Origin: Dimorphilus gyrociliatus
Lineage: Eukaryota; Animalia; Annelida
NCBI GenBank assembly: GCA_904063045.1
Contig: CAJFCJ010000019.1
Span: 1,503,700-1,567,699, forward strand
Direction: 5' to 3'
DNA: 64,000 bases
Under the pieces are notes generated by a model. That model made no database searches. It saw only the letters and a list, made by a program, of their open reading frames with translations, and had not been told where the DNA came from. Position numbers and translations under genes: made by a program. Positions 26,003 to 58,659 of this stretch are shown piece after piece; the stretch's first letter is position 1; the number at the start of each line of letters is the position of its first letter.

Positions 26003-27767
26003 CTAGGTATCGTACACTAAACCTGCAATTTGATATCGAATCATAAAAGCGACAATACTACATAATGCTTGAAGCATTAAATAAACACAACACAATGTTT
26101 TCTCATGTAACGGCCCGAACAGCCTCAGTAGCAAGTTCAGAATCGTCATATTAGTGCACTTGTAATGAATATGGTTCTCTTTTTCAACAGTTTGCGTTAG
26201 GTTGATTCTGAAAAAATAGAACAATCACAATTTTTTAATTATATATCTCGTATAGCTCACAATCTAAAGAAAGATGCAATACGGAGAATATATTTTCCTG
26301 GAAATTTGATATCTTTTTCGCTAAATTCGGCTAAGCTAGATTCCAATTTGTCAGTTTTTACATTATATCTATTAAAAAAATAAAATAAATTCAAATCATC
26401 TATAGGTAAGAATTTGAAAAGGTTAACAAACTTTGGCATCCTATGCCTTGGACAGGGAACAAAGTGAAATAGTTGGGGAGCAGAGAAAAGAAAGTTGAAT
26501 ACTTGAGGAATAAAGAATAGGAGCATAGTTTTGCTGTAAAATATAACAAATTACACTCTGTTTTTATAACAATACATTTAATCTATTTTTCAAGCAAACA
26601 AACCTAAAATGACCAAGAATAGCAACAACGGCAAATGTCATACCAGAAAAGTAACAAAACGTATCACCAACAAAGGCGTTTGCTGGATACCTAAAGAAAT
26701 TAATAAATTATGTAAAATTAAAGGAGGGATATAAAAATCTTATTAAATTTACCAATTGTGATACAATAAACCCAAACATACTCCAATATAAGGCATAAGG
26801 AAGTACAAAGAAAAAATATGTGCTTCGCGATGAGTTCCATGAATTTCTAAAACATTAAAAATGACTACTGATATTGCAATTATGAGACTTTGTCCAGCTT
26901 CAACACCATTAATACCAGCTAGAATGTTTATTGCATTGGTACAAAAAACTGCTAGCATTCCCATATATAGATAGTAAAGTGGTCCAATATTTATGGAAAA
27001 TCCAACAAATGCCCGAAATGGTTTAGGAACAATTATCTCTGTGAGATCAAATGTAACGAAATAGACCATAAGAAGTGGTAACGAAGCTATGGTAGGTAAA
27101 AGGAGTTTGTGACGCCATCTAAGTGATTTATTAGGTTTTAATGTGAAAAAAGAATAGTAAAAAAAATTTGAAACTACCGCAGATCCATGACATCATCAGC
27201 AAAACCCAAGAAAATCATACAGCAAATTGACAGTAATGCAGCTAGGAATTGAACATACTGCAAATAAGATATTTTTTAAGTTATATTCAAAGCTTCAATG
27301 GATTGTAAAACATACCTCGGAAAATGGAAATTGAGTTCCTATCGATCGATTATAGAAATATTCATAGAAAGGAACGGGAATGAACAGAAAGAGAACGATT
27401 AGAAAAAATGCTCCTGCTAATACTCCTTGAGCTTCTGGCCTAAACATATAAAAAGTTTTTAAGGACTTTCTTACTACCGATAATTGTGAAAAGATTTATA
27501 ATAATAATAATTACTATTATTACTATTATTATTGTTAAATCATAAATCATACGGCTGCGAACTTAAATTAAGCTGGTAGAATTTCTCAAATGCATTACTA
27601 ACAACTTACAGTTTTTTTAATTGAGCTTTATTTAAATCTTTCCCAAACAAATTAGCGCCAATAAACATTTTGGAGAATCTTGGTATAATTTTAATTAAAA
27701 TTAATGATGAAACCAATGAAAAGGCTGCATTTATGATTAATGTCAAGATCAACTTAGTATCTTCCAT
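26003..27767 (-). CDS. DPAGT1: UDP-GlcNAc:dolichyl-phosphate GlcNAc-1-phosphotransferase (GPT/ALG7); multi-exon
   Basis: LFGKDLNK...PEAQGV; FLGFADD; [23 protein letters not shown]; [10 protein letters not shown]; [29 protein letters not shown]; [10 protein letters not shown]. Confidence 0.95.
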
Positions 27768-48324: not shown

Positions 48325-48584
48325 TGCTGTTGTTGACTTGTTTTTGAATGCTTACTGTAATAAAATTCGAATATGGCGCTGTCATCCATATCCGGCACGT
48401 GTTTTAAAACACTTCCGCTGCGTTGGTAGTCGCCATCTTGAAAAAGCCGCAAAAAAAAAACTGTGGTATTTTCTGAGACAATCGGACGTATAACGTAAGT
48501 TTTCTCAATAAAAATTGTTCTCAACAGCCAGGTGACGTTTATATGTTAATATAAAAAGGGTATTTAGGTTCATAAGTCAGCCAA

Positions 48585-49472
48585 ATGACTCAATATTTGC
48601 CACCTAATTTACTCGCTCTGTTCGCTCCGAGAGAACCCATACCTTACAAGGGACCGGTCGGTAAGCTTCCATGGGAAAAGGTAATAAAACCGTATAACGG
48701 TATCGCGGAATATGTAAAGTGTTTTGAGGACCCAAAAGATACACCGCCTCCAACTAGAATTGAAACTCGTGAAGAAAGAGCTGAAAGGAAAAGAAAGGAA
48801 CGCGCTGAAACCGCCGCTTACAAATTAGAACAGGATTTAGCGTTATGGGATCCTCACAGTGATGCAAATGCAACTTCAGATCCCTATAAGACTCTATTTG
48901 TAGCTCGGGTAAATTATGACACTTCGGAAAGTAAGTTAAAGCGTGAGTTTGAACAATACGGACCAATTAGAAAAATCAATATCGTTTACAACAAAAAGAA
49001 TGGTAATCCAAGAGGTTACGCTTTTATTGAATATGAGCATGAGAGAGACATGCATAGTGCATACAAAAGAGCAGACGGTAAGAAAATTGACGGTCGTCGA
49101 GTAGTAGTAGATGTGGAGCGGTCAAGAACCGTAAAAAACTGGAGACCTCGTAGGCTTGGAGGAGGATTGGGCAATACCAGGAGGGGCCCAACTGATATGA
49201 ATAGCTGCAGTAGAGCTGAGGACAGTTCTGAGAGGCGTGATAGATCCAGATCACGATCTAGGAAACGTCGAAGCCACTCCAGGTCTAAGGAACGCCGACA
49301 TCGTAGGTCTCGGTCTCGTGACAGACGTCGTCGAAGTAGATCTCGAGATAGAAAACGGCGTAGATCAAGATCACGTAATAGATCTAAATCAAAAGATAGG
49401 AGAAAGAGAGGGAGAAGCCGTGAAAATGGTGCAACAGAAGTGGAGGATGGAGAATATGTCGGTGATTATTAG
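48585..49472 (+). CDS. SNRNP70: U1 snRNP 70K protein; intronless CDS, 295 aa
   Basis: [21 protein letters not shown]; [20 protein letters not shown]...[15 protein letters not shown]...[29 protein letters not shown]; RS/RD tail. Confidence 0.98.
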
Positions 49473-49478
49473 GGAACT

Positions 49479-49754
49479 GTAAGTGTGTGTTAAGTTTTGC
49501 TTTTATTGTCCTTTATGTAACGTGCGCGTGTTCCTATAGGGCGACTTCGCCTGACTTCTTAAAAAAATACACTATGTAAGGTAAGACCTGGTAAGATCGA
49601 GTCCAAAGTCCTATCAATGATTCAATGATGAGTGGTAAGGCTTGGTAAGATATATTTAAACTAAGCTTGAATTTTTTAGTCTTAAATTTTACGTTAGATA
49701 AAACCCAATAAAGTCTAAAAAAAAAAAAGATATTTATATTACGTTGAGGTAAGG
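49479..49754 (+). promoter_or_regulatory. Cluster of 5' splice-site (U1-binding) motifs and a putative 3'UTR intron downstream of SNRNP70
   Basis: GTAAG at 49479, 49576, 49581, 49591, 49635, 49645 and 49749. GTAAGT(49479)...TTCCTATAG(49539) forms a typical 61-nt intron. Confidence 0.7.
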
Positions 49755-49805
49755 CAGCGATTTGGGTTCACATAAACATTGACGCTTAACGTAAATTAAA
49801 AAAAA

Positions 49806-49833
49806 GATATATACATATATAATATACATATAC

Positions 49834-49875
<42 letters not shown>
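49806..49875. repeat. (TA)n/TACA microsatellite downstream of SNRNP70
   Basis: Pure TA run about 49836-49868 with degenerate flanks. Confidence 0.9.
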
Positions 49876-50343
49876 AACTACAACTGTAAAAATAAATAAA
49901 AAAAATCATAAAGTTACGAAAATCTTAAGGAAACTATCATTTCGCAGGTAGTATGTATTCAGGTAAATTTCTTTGACTTTGAATATTGTATCCCCATTTG
50001 TGAATTGTTGTAATTCCAAACGGAAAACTGATTTTAAGGAATAGAAATTATAGAATATCATCTGAATAGTTACTTCATGTGATTGAAGACGTACTTTGAT
50101 ACATTGGTAGGTATACATAGCTCAATATGAAGCGACCAATGGACTCGAATCTAATCAAAGCTTGTGCTGTACTTGTTTTTTTTTCTATGACCGTTTTTAC
50201 TTATTTTTACTTCTCGTTGTTCTTTTGATTGATAGCAGTTGCTTTTGTTGAGTATCAATAAAAGTTGTTTAATCATTCCGAAAATATTAATCTGCAGAAC
50301 ACATACACAAAAAAAATTTACAAAATATTTACAATTAGTTTAA

Positions 50344-53300
50344 TCAGGCTGTTCCTCTTTTTAACTGTTCGCTGGCATCTCGAATCTGATTAACGCGTTT
50401 GGATAAAACTTGCTCGCGAGTTTTCATTTCCGTTATGATTACATTCTGTGCGTCGACAGCCTCTTTTAAATTTTTTACAATATCCTCAAGATTCAATTTA
50501 GCTAACGCTAACTTTGAATCTTCTACATCTTTTGCTAATTTTTCAAGGGAGGATGAATCGAGATGCTTAACTGCAGATAGTCTTTTCATTATATCTTTCA
50601 AATCCTTATCAGTTTTTTCCGTTGACGTTGTTACATTTTCAACGCTTCCAGCTGCTTGTTGAGACAAGTTGATAAGATTCTCAGTTAGTTTTTGAGCGCT
50701 ATCAGTTCTCTCAACTGCTGGCATTATATGGCTTGCATTCAGCTTTGTTACGTTGTTTGCTTGCTCTATGGCACTTGGTACTAGTTCATCAGCTTGGTTT
50801 GATAGAATATCGGATATGTTTTTCGTTGATTCCAGTTCGTCCTTTTGCTTGTTAGCCAACGTTTTCGCTTCATTTGCTATTTGAAGGGCTGAAGCAGAAT
50901 TTGTATTCGCTGGTGTCAGTTGGGTTTGAATAGACTTTGATACTCTGGTTGCATCTTCTGCTTGAGATTGGACCTTTGTTACTGTGGCTAGTGCATCATC
51001 AGCCTCTTTTTTAATTGCGGTTGATTTTGTGCCAAAGTTTTTCATTATATCAAGCATATTTGTGGCGCTATCGAAACTCTCCTTTTCCAATTGCTGTGCG
51101 TCTTTAGCAGTCGTGTGTGACGTCGATGTCTTTGAAAGTATATTTTTGGCTGAATCTGCCCTTTTCTCAGCATCGTTTTTCAGTTTCGAGGCTTCTTTAT
51201 TCGCCTCTGCAACTCTAGCAACTATGGAGGCAGCTTTACCTTTTTCTGTATCAGATTGAGCTTTAACATCACCGGATCTTGTATTCAAAGCGGTTGCTCT
51301 ATCTTGTAAAGCTTTTACGTTTGTTCCTATATCCGCAATTTTCTCCGCTTCATTCTTAGCTTCCATTGCCCGTCTCTCTGTATCAGTCGCATCATTCTTC
51401 AGTTTCTTAGTATTTTCCAGATTTGCATTTGACTCGTGTATAGCTGTGTTAGATTTCTCTTCCAATTTAACCAATTCGCTTTTTAACTCTTCATGACGTT
51501 TTACAATATCTTTTGCCACTTTTAGAGCTTCGTCCGCGTCTTTTTTAGCTTTATTTGCATCATTTCTTATCTTTTGAACTATACTTGTTGTCGATGTTAA
51601 ATCACCGGTTGCCGATGAAGATAAATCTTGCAGCTGTTTTTCAGCAGCTGTCAGAGAATCGGCTAGATTCCTTAATGTATACAATTGATCCCATACTGAT
51701 TCATCTAGCATTCGGACAGTTAAATTCGTAAGCTGTAGAGTTTCATCCAAAGTTGTTTTTCCCTCCGTCAGACACTCTTCCGCTTTAATAACGGATTTGT
51801 TTGCAGTAGCGAGAATCTTCGGTATTTCTTCATCTATCTTTACCCTAAACAATTGCATCGTACTATTCAGGCGGCTAATATCGCTAGATACTCTGTTTTC
51901 AAGTGTTGTTGCGGTAGATAAGAAGGATATTAATTTTGCCATTGATTCAACAGTATTCGATAGTCTATAAGCAAATGGTCCAAGAACTGTATTATTATCA
52001 TTTGTTTGAAGTATTTCTACGTAGTCACTAAGGTTCTGATTTAGTTCCCTAACTTTAACAACCTCTACGTCAACTCTACCGTAACACGAATCGCATACTG
52101 AAAGGGATGAAGGAATTGATTACAAGCTTATCTCCTATTTGATAATTATAAGATAATGCACGTACCCTTGCAAGTATTTGCTAAGTCATAAAAATTATCT
52201 TTGCATTCGTCGCACTTGTCTCCAACAACGTTGATCCTGCACTGGCACTTTCCAGTTTTTTGATCACATTTGCAGGTATTTCCTGCGCAATCAGCTTGTA
52301 CAGTTCCATCTTTGTTACATTTGCAAGCTATAATGTATAAAGAAAAGCTATAGCGATTAACTCTTATTTTCAAATAAATTCTTTCAACTCACGGAGGCAT
52401 CCTTCCCGAAATGGTCCCCAGAATCCAGAAAGACATGTTTGGCAGGATGAGTCCTTCCCATCTACATTAGCACTACATGTATCGCATTTATCACCCTTTG
52501 TACCATTTTTACAATCAAGGCAAATTCCTGTAGTTTCATTACAAGAGGGTGGTGAAGTAGCAGGGAACTTACAGTCACAATTAACACAAGCATTATAAGG
52601 ACTATTAGAAGTGGCTTTTCCCCTCCAATTTCCTGTTTTAGCATGGGAATATGACAATTAATTTTACATTAGTTTGTAATTTATATGTTAATTAATGTAT
52701 GGAAAAGGGATTAACCTTTAGAACAGCTTGCACACGATTTTCCGCCAACCTTCTTAGTCGCTGTACATTGACATTCCTCTACGGATGTTGATACTTCGCC
52801 AGATGTTCCCTCAACCGCTGAATCCAATCGAATATTCCGGAAGCTAATCAGTTGTGATCCGATTCTAGTTTTAACGTAGAGAGATTTCAACATTGCTAAA
52901 ACTCCTGAGAATGAGAAAGAATCGATTACAGTAGTGTCATTCAAGTACCATTGGGAATGATGTAAAACAACAGAAATCTGTTTGAATGTAGGAGTTATAG
53001 TTTGAGCTTCTAATTTGTAAAAAGTTGTAACATCCTCCCCCTTTATGTCACCAGTCATATAGATCACAGCTCCTTCATATTTTATAGGATTAGAAGATTG
53101 CACTTCAAAGGCCAATTTATTTCCATAAGCCGGTAGAAAATCCCCCGTCCACGAGGCTCTTTTAAAATCTCTTCTGCCATTGATCTCCGCCCACGGCCAA
53201 TTATCTATTTCTGAACTTGACGCTGTTAGCGTTTGCTTTTGGAAACCGGAAGCACTTTTACAAGCTGTCCCGTGACCAAAACAGAAGCATTTTTGACATC

Positions 53301-58572: not shown

Positions 58573-58659
58573 GCTTGCATGAGCTTCGGTGGTCCGGAGT
58601 GCAGGCTTCAAACCTGTAGCCGACTGGCGTCGGAGTGGTTCGATTCCACCTTGCAAGCG
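58573..58659 (+). tRNA. tRNA-Sec (anticodon TCA)
   Basis: GCTTGCATGAGCTTCGGTGGTCCGGAGTGCAGGCTTCAAACCTGTAGCCGACTGGCGTCGGAGTGGTTCGATTCCACCTTGCAAGCG: 87 nt, colinear with vertebrate tRNA-Sec. 9/4 acceptor/T arms, long variable arm (GCCGAC-TGGC-GTCGG), compensatory acceptor changes, followed by TTTATTTTT. Confidence 0.98.

What the first reader, a model, noticed from the sequence alone, without database searches (positions are those of the whole stretch)
49473..49968. Array of U1-binding 5' splice sites right after the U1-70K stop codon: candidate autoregulatory sensor
Seen: the CDS is intronless, yet seven GTAAG donors lie within ~275 nt of the stop (49479, 49576, AAG|GTAAGA 49581, 49591, 49635, 49645, GAG|GTAAGG 49749). 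Two more CAG|GT sites follow at 49948 and 49963, next to a 3'ss-like TTTCGCAG (49947). After removing the 61-nt intron 49479-49539, the competing donors would place junctions 42, 47, 57, 101, 111 and 215 nt past the stop, straddling the 50-55-nt NMD boundary. Established: vertebrate SNRNP70 is feedback-regulated by cryptic 5'ss and an NMD exon inside the gene; U1 snRNP bound in terminal exons blocks polyadenylation via U1-70K; U11 proteins use tandem 5'ss repeats (USSE). Inference: this lineage rebuilt U1-70K homeostasis in the 3'UTR after losing its coding introns.
Basis: partly seen in the sequence, partly recalled or inferred. Interest (0 to 1): 0.8.

Follow-up and report, generated by a model that had tools for sequence, protein, structure and literature searches.

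The report
Splice-site array in U1-70K 3'UTR
Right after the stop codon of this worm's intron-free U1-70K gene lies an almost unchanging stretch with one real small intron and a row of perfect binding sites for the U1 particle that the protein belongs to. It is most likely a self-measuring brake on the gene, like one known inside the vertebrate gene but moved to the tail of the message.

Summary
Observation confirmed. All seven GTAAG donors, the two CAG|GT sites and the CGCAG acceptor are at the stated coordinates. Seven GTAAG in 275 nt compares with 3-4 elsewhere in the window and at most 5 in 300 simulations.

The window matches assembly GCA_904063045.1, which I take from memory to be the annelid Dimorphilus gyrociliatus.

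- **Conservation.** Two diverged relatives (26-35% difference at fourfold sites) keep every site. Stop codon to 49655 shows 3 substitution columns where about 110 are expected. It is the most conserved stretch in the 9 kb compared.
- **RNA.** An RNA contig of one relative has the 61-nt intron 49479-49539 removed exactly and reads on through the array. Another is unspliced to about 50045.
- **Other animals.** Six other bilaterian U1-70K genes have no GTAAG within 300 nt of the stop. Their 5'ss-like clusters sit in the coding intron after ERDMH, which this gene has lost. Limulus has six GGTAAGT there.

The anatomy (a used 3'ss, adjacent 5'ss cluster, one distal site) matches the published vertebrate exon-7a switch. 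I read it as a U1 snRNP occupancy sensor moved to the 3'UTR (confidence 0.6).

Not shown: isoform use in this species, the poly(A) site, and any response to U1 or NMD.

New variant of a known kind.

The parts
48585..49472 (+). U1-70K coding sequence, 295 aa, no introns. The RNA contigs of a relative begin 26-27 nt upstream of the ATG.
49479..49539 (+). Real 61-nt 3'UTR intron (GTAAGT...TATAG) starting 6 nt after the stop. Its 3' splice site lies 37 nt upstream of the array. The interior is 97% identical between lineages, unlike neighbouring short introns (about 55%).
   Evidence: The L003 contig lacks exactly this piece while L002 keeps it. Conservation.
49540..49575 (+). Start of the 3'UTR exon. 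It holds a small self-complementary GGCG-ACTT-CGCC element at 49540-49551, and all three reading frames are closed within 39 nt.
   Evidence: read directly from the sequence
49576..49597 (+). First group of 5'ss motifs: TAT|GTAAGG (49576), AAG|GTAAGA (49581), CTG|GTAAGA (49591).
   Evidence: invariant in three lineages
49634..49651 (+). Second group: GTG|GTAAGG (49635) and TTG|GTAAGA (49645). It is a copy of the 18-nt unit at 49580. The spacer between the copies carries an 8-nt tandem duplication in this lineage only.
49707..49712 (+). Candidate proximal poly(A) signal AATAAA in the poorly conserved A-rich stretch 49700-49745. Each lineage has an AATAAA here, but not at the same position.
   Evidence: use not shown
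49746..49758 (+). Isolated conserved island TGAG|GTAAGGCAG (donor at 49749), identical in three lineages amid about 50% identity. Likely a real distal donor or U1 site.
49749..49947 (+). Putative second 3'UTR intron: conserved ends, diverged interior.
   Evidence: splicing not observed
49948..50320 (+). Conserved downstream block (85-92% identity). It starts exactly at the CGCAG| acceptor and holds CAG|GTAAAT (49963) and a conserved AATAAA at 50257. Probably the terminal 3'UTR exon. Its far end overlaps the 3' end of the convergent laminin gene.
   Evidence: The L002 RNA contig runs unbroken to about 50045.

Best explanation
The 3'UTR of this intronless U1-70K gene carries a sensor of U1 snRNP occupancy.

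Anatomy:
- A short intron starts 6 nt after the stop.
- Its 3' splice site is followed within 37-106 nt by five closely spaced consensus 5' splice sites.
- A sixth site lies 100 nt further on.
- Next comes a diverged intron-like stretch, then a conserved acceptor and a conserved terminal block with a poly(A) signal.

Inferred mechanism:
- When complete U1 snRNP (with U1-70K and U1C) is plentiful, it fills the array.
- As in the vertebrate exon-7a switch, this favours use of the adjacent 3' splice site (49539). The array then stays in the transcript instead of being removed with a long intron 49479-49947.
- Crowded 5' splice sites are poor substrates, so the array-bearing RNA is unproductive in one of three ways:
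  - U1-70K on unused 5'ss in a terminal exon blocks polyadenylation.
  - The RNA is held in the nucleus.
  - A late splice from an array or distal donor to 49947 leaves a junction 57-215 nt past the stop and triggers NMD.
- When U1 is scarce, more productive mRNA is made.

Shown here: the motifs, their extreme conservation, transcription through the array, and splicing of the 61-nt intron.

Inferred: U1 binding, the direction of the switch, and which decay route applies.
For: 1. The motif density is far above chance. Every site pairs 5-7 nt with the U1 5' end.
2. Three lineages differ at 26-35% of fourfold sites but keep all nine sites. From the stop to 49655 there are 3 substitution columns plus indels. 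Window bins 49450-49600 are 98% identical to L004, the highest of 9 kb. The CDS is 78-98% identical, and introns and intergenic DNA 45-65%.
3. The donor at 49749 and the acceptor at 49947 are conserved islands or edges flanking diverged sequence.
4. Relative's RNA: L003 is spliced exactly at 49479-49539 and continues through the array. L002 is unspliced to about 50045. Both start 26-27 nt before the ATG.
5. The same anatomy is published for vertebrate U1-70K. There an alternative 3'ss is activated by an adjacent cluster of 5'ss A-C within about 85 nt, with a further site D. The cluster is bound by U1 snRNP and rarely spliced, and the region is highly conserved (PMC3798272).
6. Six other bilaterian genes have 0 GTAAG in the 300 nt after the stop. 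The five invertebrates among them are enriched for strong 5'ss motifs in the ERDMH intron. Limulus has six GGTAAGT in three 27-nt units just after a 3'ss-like site.
7. 5'ss motifs in terminal exons are known to block polyadenylation through U1-70K. The mammalian U1A 3'UTR has such a site and HPV-16 has four in tandem (PMC5071671). They also cause U1-70K-dependent nuclear retention (PMC9074902).
8. Thermodynamic structure and known RNA families do not explain the conservation.
Against: - No read-level RNA data for this species.
- No junction using an array donor, and no 49478-to-49948 junction, was seen.
- Only two isoforms are known, both from metatranscriptome contigs of a relative.
- The 3' end of the mRNA is unknown.
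- No premature stop is created, so the vertebrate NMD logic does not carry over directly. Whether annelid NMD follows the 50-55-nt rule is unknown.
- The whole block is conserved, spacers and intron interior included. Something beyond U1 pairing, or other than it, is under selection.
- The three lineages are too alike in the block to tell motif positions from spacer positions.
Confidence: 0.6

Rival explanations
1. It is an ordinary multi-intron 3'UTR. The gene lost its coding introns and keeps or gained UTR introns for the general benefits of splicing (export, expression). The GTAAG sites are merely alternative donors. The block is conserved for other reasons, such as binding of other proteins or small RNAs, localisation or stability, with no feedback from U1.
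For: Intron 1 is real and intron 2 has typical intron conservation. Conservation is not limited to the motifs. No functional data exist.
Against: Five unused consensus donors within 70 nt are not needed for splicing benefits, and they would harm an ordinary mRNA (PMC5071671, PMC9074902). The gene is U1-70K itself, whose relatives carry comparable clusters. No other place in the 64 kb has such a cluster.
Confidence: 0.22
2. The conserved block acts at the DNA level or for the neighbouring gene. It could be a terminator or insulator between the convergent U1-70K and laminin genes, an enhancer, or part of a long laminin 3'UTR read on the other strand.
For: The genes converge, and the block 50100-50320 next to the laminin stop is about 90% conserved while the laminin coding sequence is only 60-78%. 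Poly(A) signals of both strands lie at 50257 and 50268.
Against: All nine motifs face the U1-70K strand. The RNA contigs are continuous from the U1-70K CDS through the array, and one is spliced on the + strand. The most conserved part touches the U1-70K stop, 870 nt from the laminin stop.
Confidence: 0.08
3. An unannotated small RNA gene or short coding exon lies in the block.
For: Extreme conservation of non-coding sequence.
Against: No Rfam match at E<=1 on either strand. Folding is no better than for shuffles (z +0.72 and -0.39). All three frames of 49540 onward close within 39 nt, and there is no + strand ORF of 60 aa or more. The protein already has the normal C-terminus.
Confidence: 0.05

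Closest known systems
Vertebrate U1-70K (SNRNP70) exon-7a switch, the U1C/U1-70K cross-regulation (Rosel-Hillgartner et al. 2013, PMC3798272)
   Same: - Same gene.
- A 3' splice site is followed within about 100 nt by a cluster of closely spaced 5' splice sites, plus one further downstream.
- The region is highly conserved.
- RNA uses the 3'ss and then stays unspliced across the cluster (L003 here; 7-7a reads there).
   Different: - Here the module sits after the stop codon, not in the coding intron after ERDMH.
- No premature stop is created.
- The sites are strong consensus GGTAAG in duplicated pairs, not weak sites A and B.
- U1 and U1C dependence and NMD are untested here.
5' splice-site-like inhibitory elements in terminal exons: BPV-1 late 3'UTR, the HPV-16 element with four tandem sites, and the U1 site in the mammalian U1A 3'UTR (reviewed in PMC5071671)
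   Same: Unused 5'ss motifs, sometimes in tandem, lie in a 3'UTR upstream of poly(A) signals. One example is in a U1 snRNP protein gene. The effector is U1-70K, so here the product would act on its own message.
   Different: Here the array lies next to real splice sites and may be intronic in one isoform. The poly(A) site in use is unknown, and inhibition of polyadenylation was not tested.
USSE of the U11-48K and U11/U12-65K genes (Verbeeren et al. 2010, as cited in PMC3798272)
   Same: Tandem 5' splice sites bound by the cognate snRNP activate an upstream 3'ss. This feeds back on a protein of that snRNP, partly through 3'UTR isoforms.
   Different: USSE repeats are U12-type (ATATCC-like) and bind U11. 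No such motif occurs here. These sites are U2-type.
3'UTR-intron NMD autoregulation of splicing factors (for example SRSF2; from my own knowledge, not checked in a paper here)
   Same: A splicing factor gene has conserved 3'UTR introns more than 55 nt past the stop, whose removal would mark the mRNA for NMD.
   Different: There the factor binds enhancer-type sites. Here the sensed element would be the 5' splice site itself, and use of the second intron is not shown.

Membership tests
U1-70K exon-7a-type switch (alternative 3'ss plus regulatory 5'ss cluster) | Lies in the U1-70K gene transcript | tested here: met
   Pfam U1snRNP70_N and RRM_1, with orthologues. RNA contigs are continuous from the CDS through the array.
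U1-70K exon-7a-type switch (alternative 3'ss plus regulatory 5'ss cluster) | A used 3' splice site immediately upstream (under about 100 nt) of three or more closely spaced 5'ss motifs | tested here: met
   The 3'ss at 49539 is used in L003. 5'ss lie at +37, +42, +52, +96 and +106, and a distal one at +210. In vertebrates the cluster lies within about 85 nt.
U1-70K exon-7a-type switch (alternative 3'ss plus regulatory 5'ss cluster) | Strong conservation of the 3'ss and cluster region | tested here: met
   97-98% identity against 26-35% fourfold-site divergence in three lineages.
U1-70K exon-7a-type switch (alternative 3'ss plus regulatory 5'ss cluster) | Located in the coding intron between exons 7 and 8, so that use of the 3'ss introduces a premature stop. 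That this is the intron after ERDMH is my assumption; the paper does not give the residue. | tested here: not met
   The CDS has no introns. The module starts 6 nt after the normal stop. The ERDMH intron is present in six other animals.
U1-70K exon-7a-type switch (alternative 3'ss plus regulatory 5'ss cluster) | U1 snRNP binding by base pairing, U1C/U1-70K dependence, and NMD of the product | not testable with these tools
   Needs binding assays, knockdowns and NMD inhibition. Only complementarity is shown.
Terminal-exon 5'ss elements that block polyadenylation via U1-70K | Unspliced 5'ss motif in the terminal exon upstream of the poly(A) signal in use | tested here: inconclusive
   AATAAA lies 60-130 nt downstream (49707), but not at a conserved position. 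A conserved AATAAA is at 50257. The 3' end of the mRNA is unknown, and the relative's RNA reads past 49707.
USSE (U11 snRNP feedback element) | Tandem U12-type 5'ss (RTATCCT) | tested here: not met
3'UTR-intron NMD autoregulation | Spliced intron more than 50-55 nt downstream of the stop | tested here: inconclusive
   The candidate intron 49749-49947 has conserved ends and a diverged interior, but no spliced RNA was seen. The one proven intron is only 6 nt past the stop.

The most novel reading that the evidence does not exclude
Arrays of 5' splice sites that measure U1 snRNP would be a feature of U1-70K genes across bilaterians, not only vertebrates. When the dinophilid lineage lost every coding intron, perhaps through a retrocopy at a new locus, selection re-created the sensor de novo in the 3'UTR. 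There it works without any premature stop. U1-70K, carried by U1 snRNP onto the array, would directly shut down 3'-end formation or export of its own mRNA.
Probability: 0.3. Interest if true: 0.8.

Novelty: new variant of a known kind. Interest (0 to 1): 0.62.

Why it matters
U1 snRNP level sets splice-site choice and protects transcripts from premature cleavage, so cells must measure it.

The only worked-out sensor for U1-70K sits in a coding intron of vertebrates. Here a gene that lost that intron carries the same kind of module in its 3'UTR, under stronger constraint than the protein. This suggests the sensor is indispensable and can be rebuilt elsewhere.

It is also a compact module of about 300 nt, free of any premature stop. 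That would make it useful for separating the three ways unused 5' splice sites can silence an mRNA: polyadenylation block, nuclear retention and NMD.

The clusters seen in the Limulus, Owenia, Danaus and Eurytemora introns suggest the principle is older than vertebrates. My literature searches found no report of this.

Tried and rejected
- **Read laying on 48450-50450.** Alignments, Rfam scans and folds were run on 49473-49803 and on 49886 onward. I took no contig for human.
- **Word search with the C-terminal half.** No near-identical fragments, so no further contigs with this 3'UTR.
- **Exact look-up of the window's own protein.** Only the NCBI genome contig.
- **Look-up of the minus-strand 70-aa ORF 49909-50118.** Not on record.
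- **JGI metagenome scan for the start of the UTR exon.** No match.
- **Lingula and Alligator look-ups.** Not on record.
- **Rfam on both flanks.** Nothing.
- **RNA folding.** No better than shuffles, so a structured-RNA reading was dropped.
- **A 7-of-9 consensus score for 5'ss clusters.** Too strict to be useful, so it was replaced by GTRAG counts.
- **Alternative coding exon.** Rejected: stops in all frames and a normal C-terminus.
- **U12-type element.** Rejected.
- **Closer relatives among the protein hits.** None beyond the two lineages found, so the relocation cannot be dated.

Full report
**What is there**

The window matches NCBI assembly GCA_904063045.1, contig CAJFCJ010000019.1. From memory I take this to be the annelid Dimorphilus gyrociliatus, but the accession was not found in the genome paper's text. 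The best named protein hits include the annelids Helobdella and Owenia, alongside a scorpion.

The ORF 48585-49472 (+) encodes a 295-aa U1-70K with U1snRNP70_N and RRM_1. It has the usual N-terminus and the tyrosine-rich C-terminal end of orthologues. It is therefore complete and has no coding introns. Owenia, Helobdella, Limulus, Danaus, Eurytemora and a woodpecker have 8-9 coding exons.

**Check of the observation**

- GTAAG lies at 49479, 49576, 49581, 49591, 49635, 49645 and 49749.
- The CGCAG acceptor ends at 49947.
- CAG|GT lies at 49948 and 49963.

Five of the seven are GGTAAG. The + strand has 71 GTAAG in 64 kb, and no other 275-nt window on either strand has more than 4. In 300 Markov simulations the maximum was 5 for GTAAG (observed 7) and 3 for GGTAAG (observed 5).

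The sites are not fully independent. An 18-nt unit with two sites 10 nt apart occurs twice, 54 nt apart. All nine motifs offer 5-7 contiguous pairs to the canonical U1 5' end. That the U1 5' end is the same in this animal is assumed from general knowledge.

**Relatives**

The protein's 90% cluster holds two further sequences, which give three lineages.
- Lineage A is the window.
- Lineage B is represented by contigs L002 and L003.
- Lineage C has genomic contigs with the same gene order (LTV1, U1-70K, convergent laminin), L004 and L005, plus the shorter L006-L008.

At fourfold-degenerate sites the lineages differ by 33% (A-B), 35% (A-C) and 26% (B-C). Neutral sequence should therefore be heavily changed.

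All seven GTAAG, the acceptor and both CAG|GT sites are nevertheless present at matching positions in B and C.

From the stop to 49655 the three-way alignment has 3 substitution columns, two homopolymer length changes and one 8-nt duplication. A tree length of about 0.6 per site would predict roughly 110 substitutions; that estimate is my own arithmetic.

In 50-nt bins against L004:

| Region | Identity |
|---|---|
| 49450-49600 | 98%, the top of the 9 kb compared |
| U1-70K CDS | 78-98% |
| Laminin CDS | 60-78% |
| Short introns and intergenic DNA | 45-65% |

The 61-nt intron interior is as conserved as the array, which is unusual.

Beyond 49700 identity falls to about 50%. A 13-nt island around GAG|GTAAGG (49746-49758) remains perfectly conserved. 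Identity returns to 85-92% exactly at the CGCAG| acceptor and holds to about 50320, including an AATAAA at 50257.

That is the signature of a second intron, 49749-49947, followed by a conserved terminal exon.

**RNA evidence**

L003 lacks exactly the 61/62-nt piece bounded by GT and AG, and it continues unspliced through the whole array to the distal site. L002 keeps the intron and runs unspliced to the equivalent of about 50045. Both start 26-27 nt upstream of the ATG, as transcripts would.

So the first GTAAG is a real donor, 49539 is a real acceptor, and the array is transcribed.

I could not get read-level data for the window's own species. The look-up of sequencing runs listed holders. 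I worked beside those places from then on.

**What it is not**

- No Rfam family matches at E<=1.
- Folding energy is ordinary.
- No coding potential: stops occur in all frames within 39 nt of 49540.
- No U12-type motif.

**Comparison with other U1-70K genes**

None of six other bilaterian genes has a single GTAAG or GTGAG in the 300 nt after the stop. Each has an intron after ...ERDMH, and in the five invertebrates that intron is enriched for strong 5'ss motifs: 1.4-3.3 per kb against 0.7-1.6 in the rest of the gene.

The clusters found in that intron:

| Species | Locus and position |
|---|---|
| Owenia | L009 45263-45329 |
| Helobdella (a pair) | L010 6721 and 6738 |
| Danaus | L013 5532-5628 |
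| Eurytemora | L014 8153-8257 |
| Limulus | L012 26701-26781 |

The Limulus array is the most striking. It has six perfect GGTAAGT in three 27-nt tandem units, each unit with a pair 9 nt apart. It lies 24 nt after a 3'ss-like TTATTTAACAG.

The intron is long in each species. Location alone is therefore weak evidence, and I did not test conservation of these clusters.

**Known system**

In vertebrates, intron 7 of U1-70K has the following features (PMC3798272):
- An alternative 3'ss is activated by an adjacent cluster of cryptic 5'ss (A, B, C within about 85 nt, plus D further on).
- The cluster binds intact U1 snRNP.
- The sites are rarely spliced, probably because they are so close together, and the rest of the intron stays unspliced.
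- The product carries a premature stop and is degraded by NMD.
- The region is highly conserved.

The annelid module has the same anatomy (used 3'ss, crowded 5'ss, one distal site, extreme conservation, RNA that uses the 3'ss and stays unspliced beyond it). It sits after the stop codon.

Separately, unused 5'ss motifs in terminal exons block polyadenylation through U1-70K. The HPV-16 element has four in tandem and the mammalian U1A 3'UTR has one (PMC5071671). Such motifs also cause U1-70K-dependent nuclear retention (PMC9074902).

**Mechanism I commit to (inference)**

The array reports how much complete U1 snRNP is available.
- **High occupancy.** It promotes the nearby acceptor 49539 and keeps the array in the RNA. 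That RNA is then lost by polyadenylation block, nuclear retention, or NMD after a late splice to 49947.
- **Low occupancy.** More productive mRNA is made. This may be by removing the whole 49479-49947 interval, which would leave a harmless junction 6 nt after the stop.

I put 0.6 on 'U1-sensing negative feedback element'. I do not rank the three decay routes firmly. The 50-55-nt 'straddling' idea is possible but rests on arithmetic alone.

**Novelty**

This is a new variant of a known kind. It has the same logic and parts as the vertebrate switch and the terminal-exon 5'ss elements, in a new place and without a premature stop, in a gene that lost the ancestral site of the sensor.

The scan's earlier notes on this genome held nothing on this element.

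Noticed in passing
L012:26677-26840 (Limulus polyphemus U1-70K, intron after ERDMH): Six perfect GGTAAGT sit in three 27-nt tandem units, with pairs 9 nt apart. They lie 24 nt after a 3'ss-like TTATTTAACAG, and TAG|GTAAGG follows at 26833. This is a candidate invertebrate counterpart of the vertebrate exon-7a cluster.
   Followed up: partly
L009:45263-45329; L010:6721-6745; L013:5532-5635; L014:8153-8262: 5'ss-like clusters lie in the same ERDMH intron of the Owenia, Helobdella, Danaus and Eurytemora U1-70K genes. The intron is 1.4-4.5 times richer in strong 5'ss motifs than the rest of each gene. Conservation was not tested.
   Followed up: partly
L010:10702-10745: Three GTGAGG motifs within 40 nt on the gene's strand, 1.36 kb downstream of the Helobdella U1-70K stop. 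Whether they lie in its 3'UTR is unknown.
   Followed up: no
window 50100-50320: The non-coding block between the convergent U1-70K and laminin genes is about 90% identical to lineage C, while the laminin coding sequence is only 60-78%. It holds facing poly(A) signals: AATAAA (+) at 50257 and ATTAAA (-) at 50268-50273.
   Followed up: partly
window 58573-58658 (+): Selenocysteine tRNA gene (Rfam RF01852, 80.7 bits, E 1e-15).
   Followed up: no
L001:4760-6888 (window about 50344 onward, - strand): The public gene call here is a 3864-aa product carrying both RNA polymerase Rpb1 domains and laminin domains. It looks like two neighbouring genes fused in the annotation.
   Followed up: no
L009:351-1913 (-) and L011:1-1139 (-): A potassium-channel gene (BTB_2, Ion_trans) lies just upstream of U1-70K on the opposite strand in both Owenia and a woodpecker. 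In this window the upstream neighbour is LTV1. This would fit the intronless gene being a retrocopy at a new locus.
   Followed up: no
window 49612-49627: An 8-nt tandem duplication (TCAATGAT twice) lies between the two 5'ss pairs. It is present only in the window's lineage, so pair-to-pair spacing is 54 nt here and 46 nt in the relatives.
   Followed up: yes
window 49804-49885: A low-complexity stretch inside the putative second 3'UTR intron.
   Followed up: no
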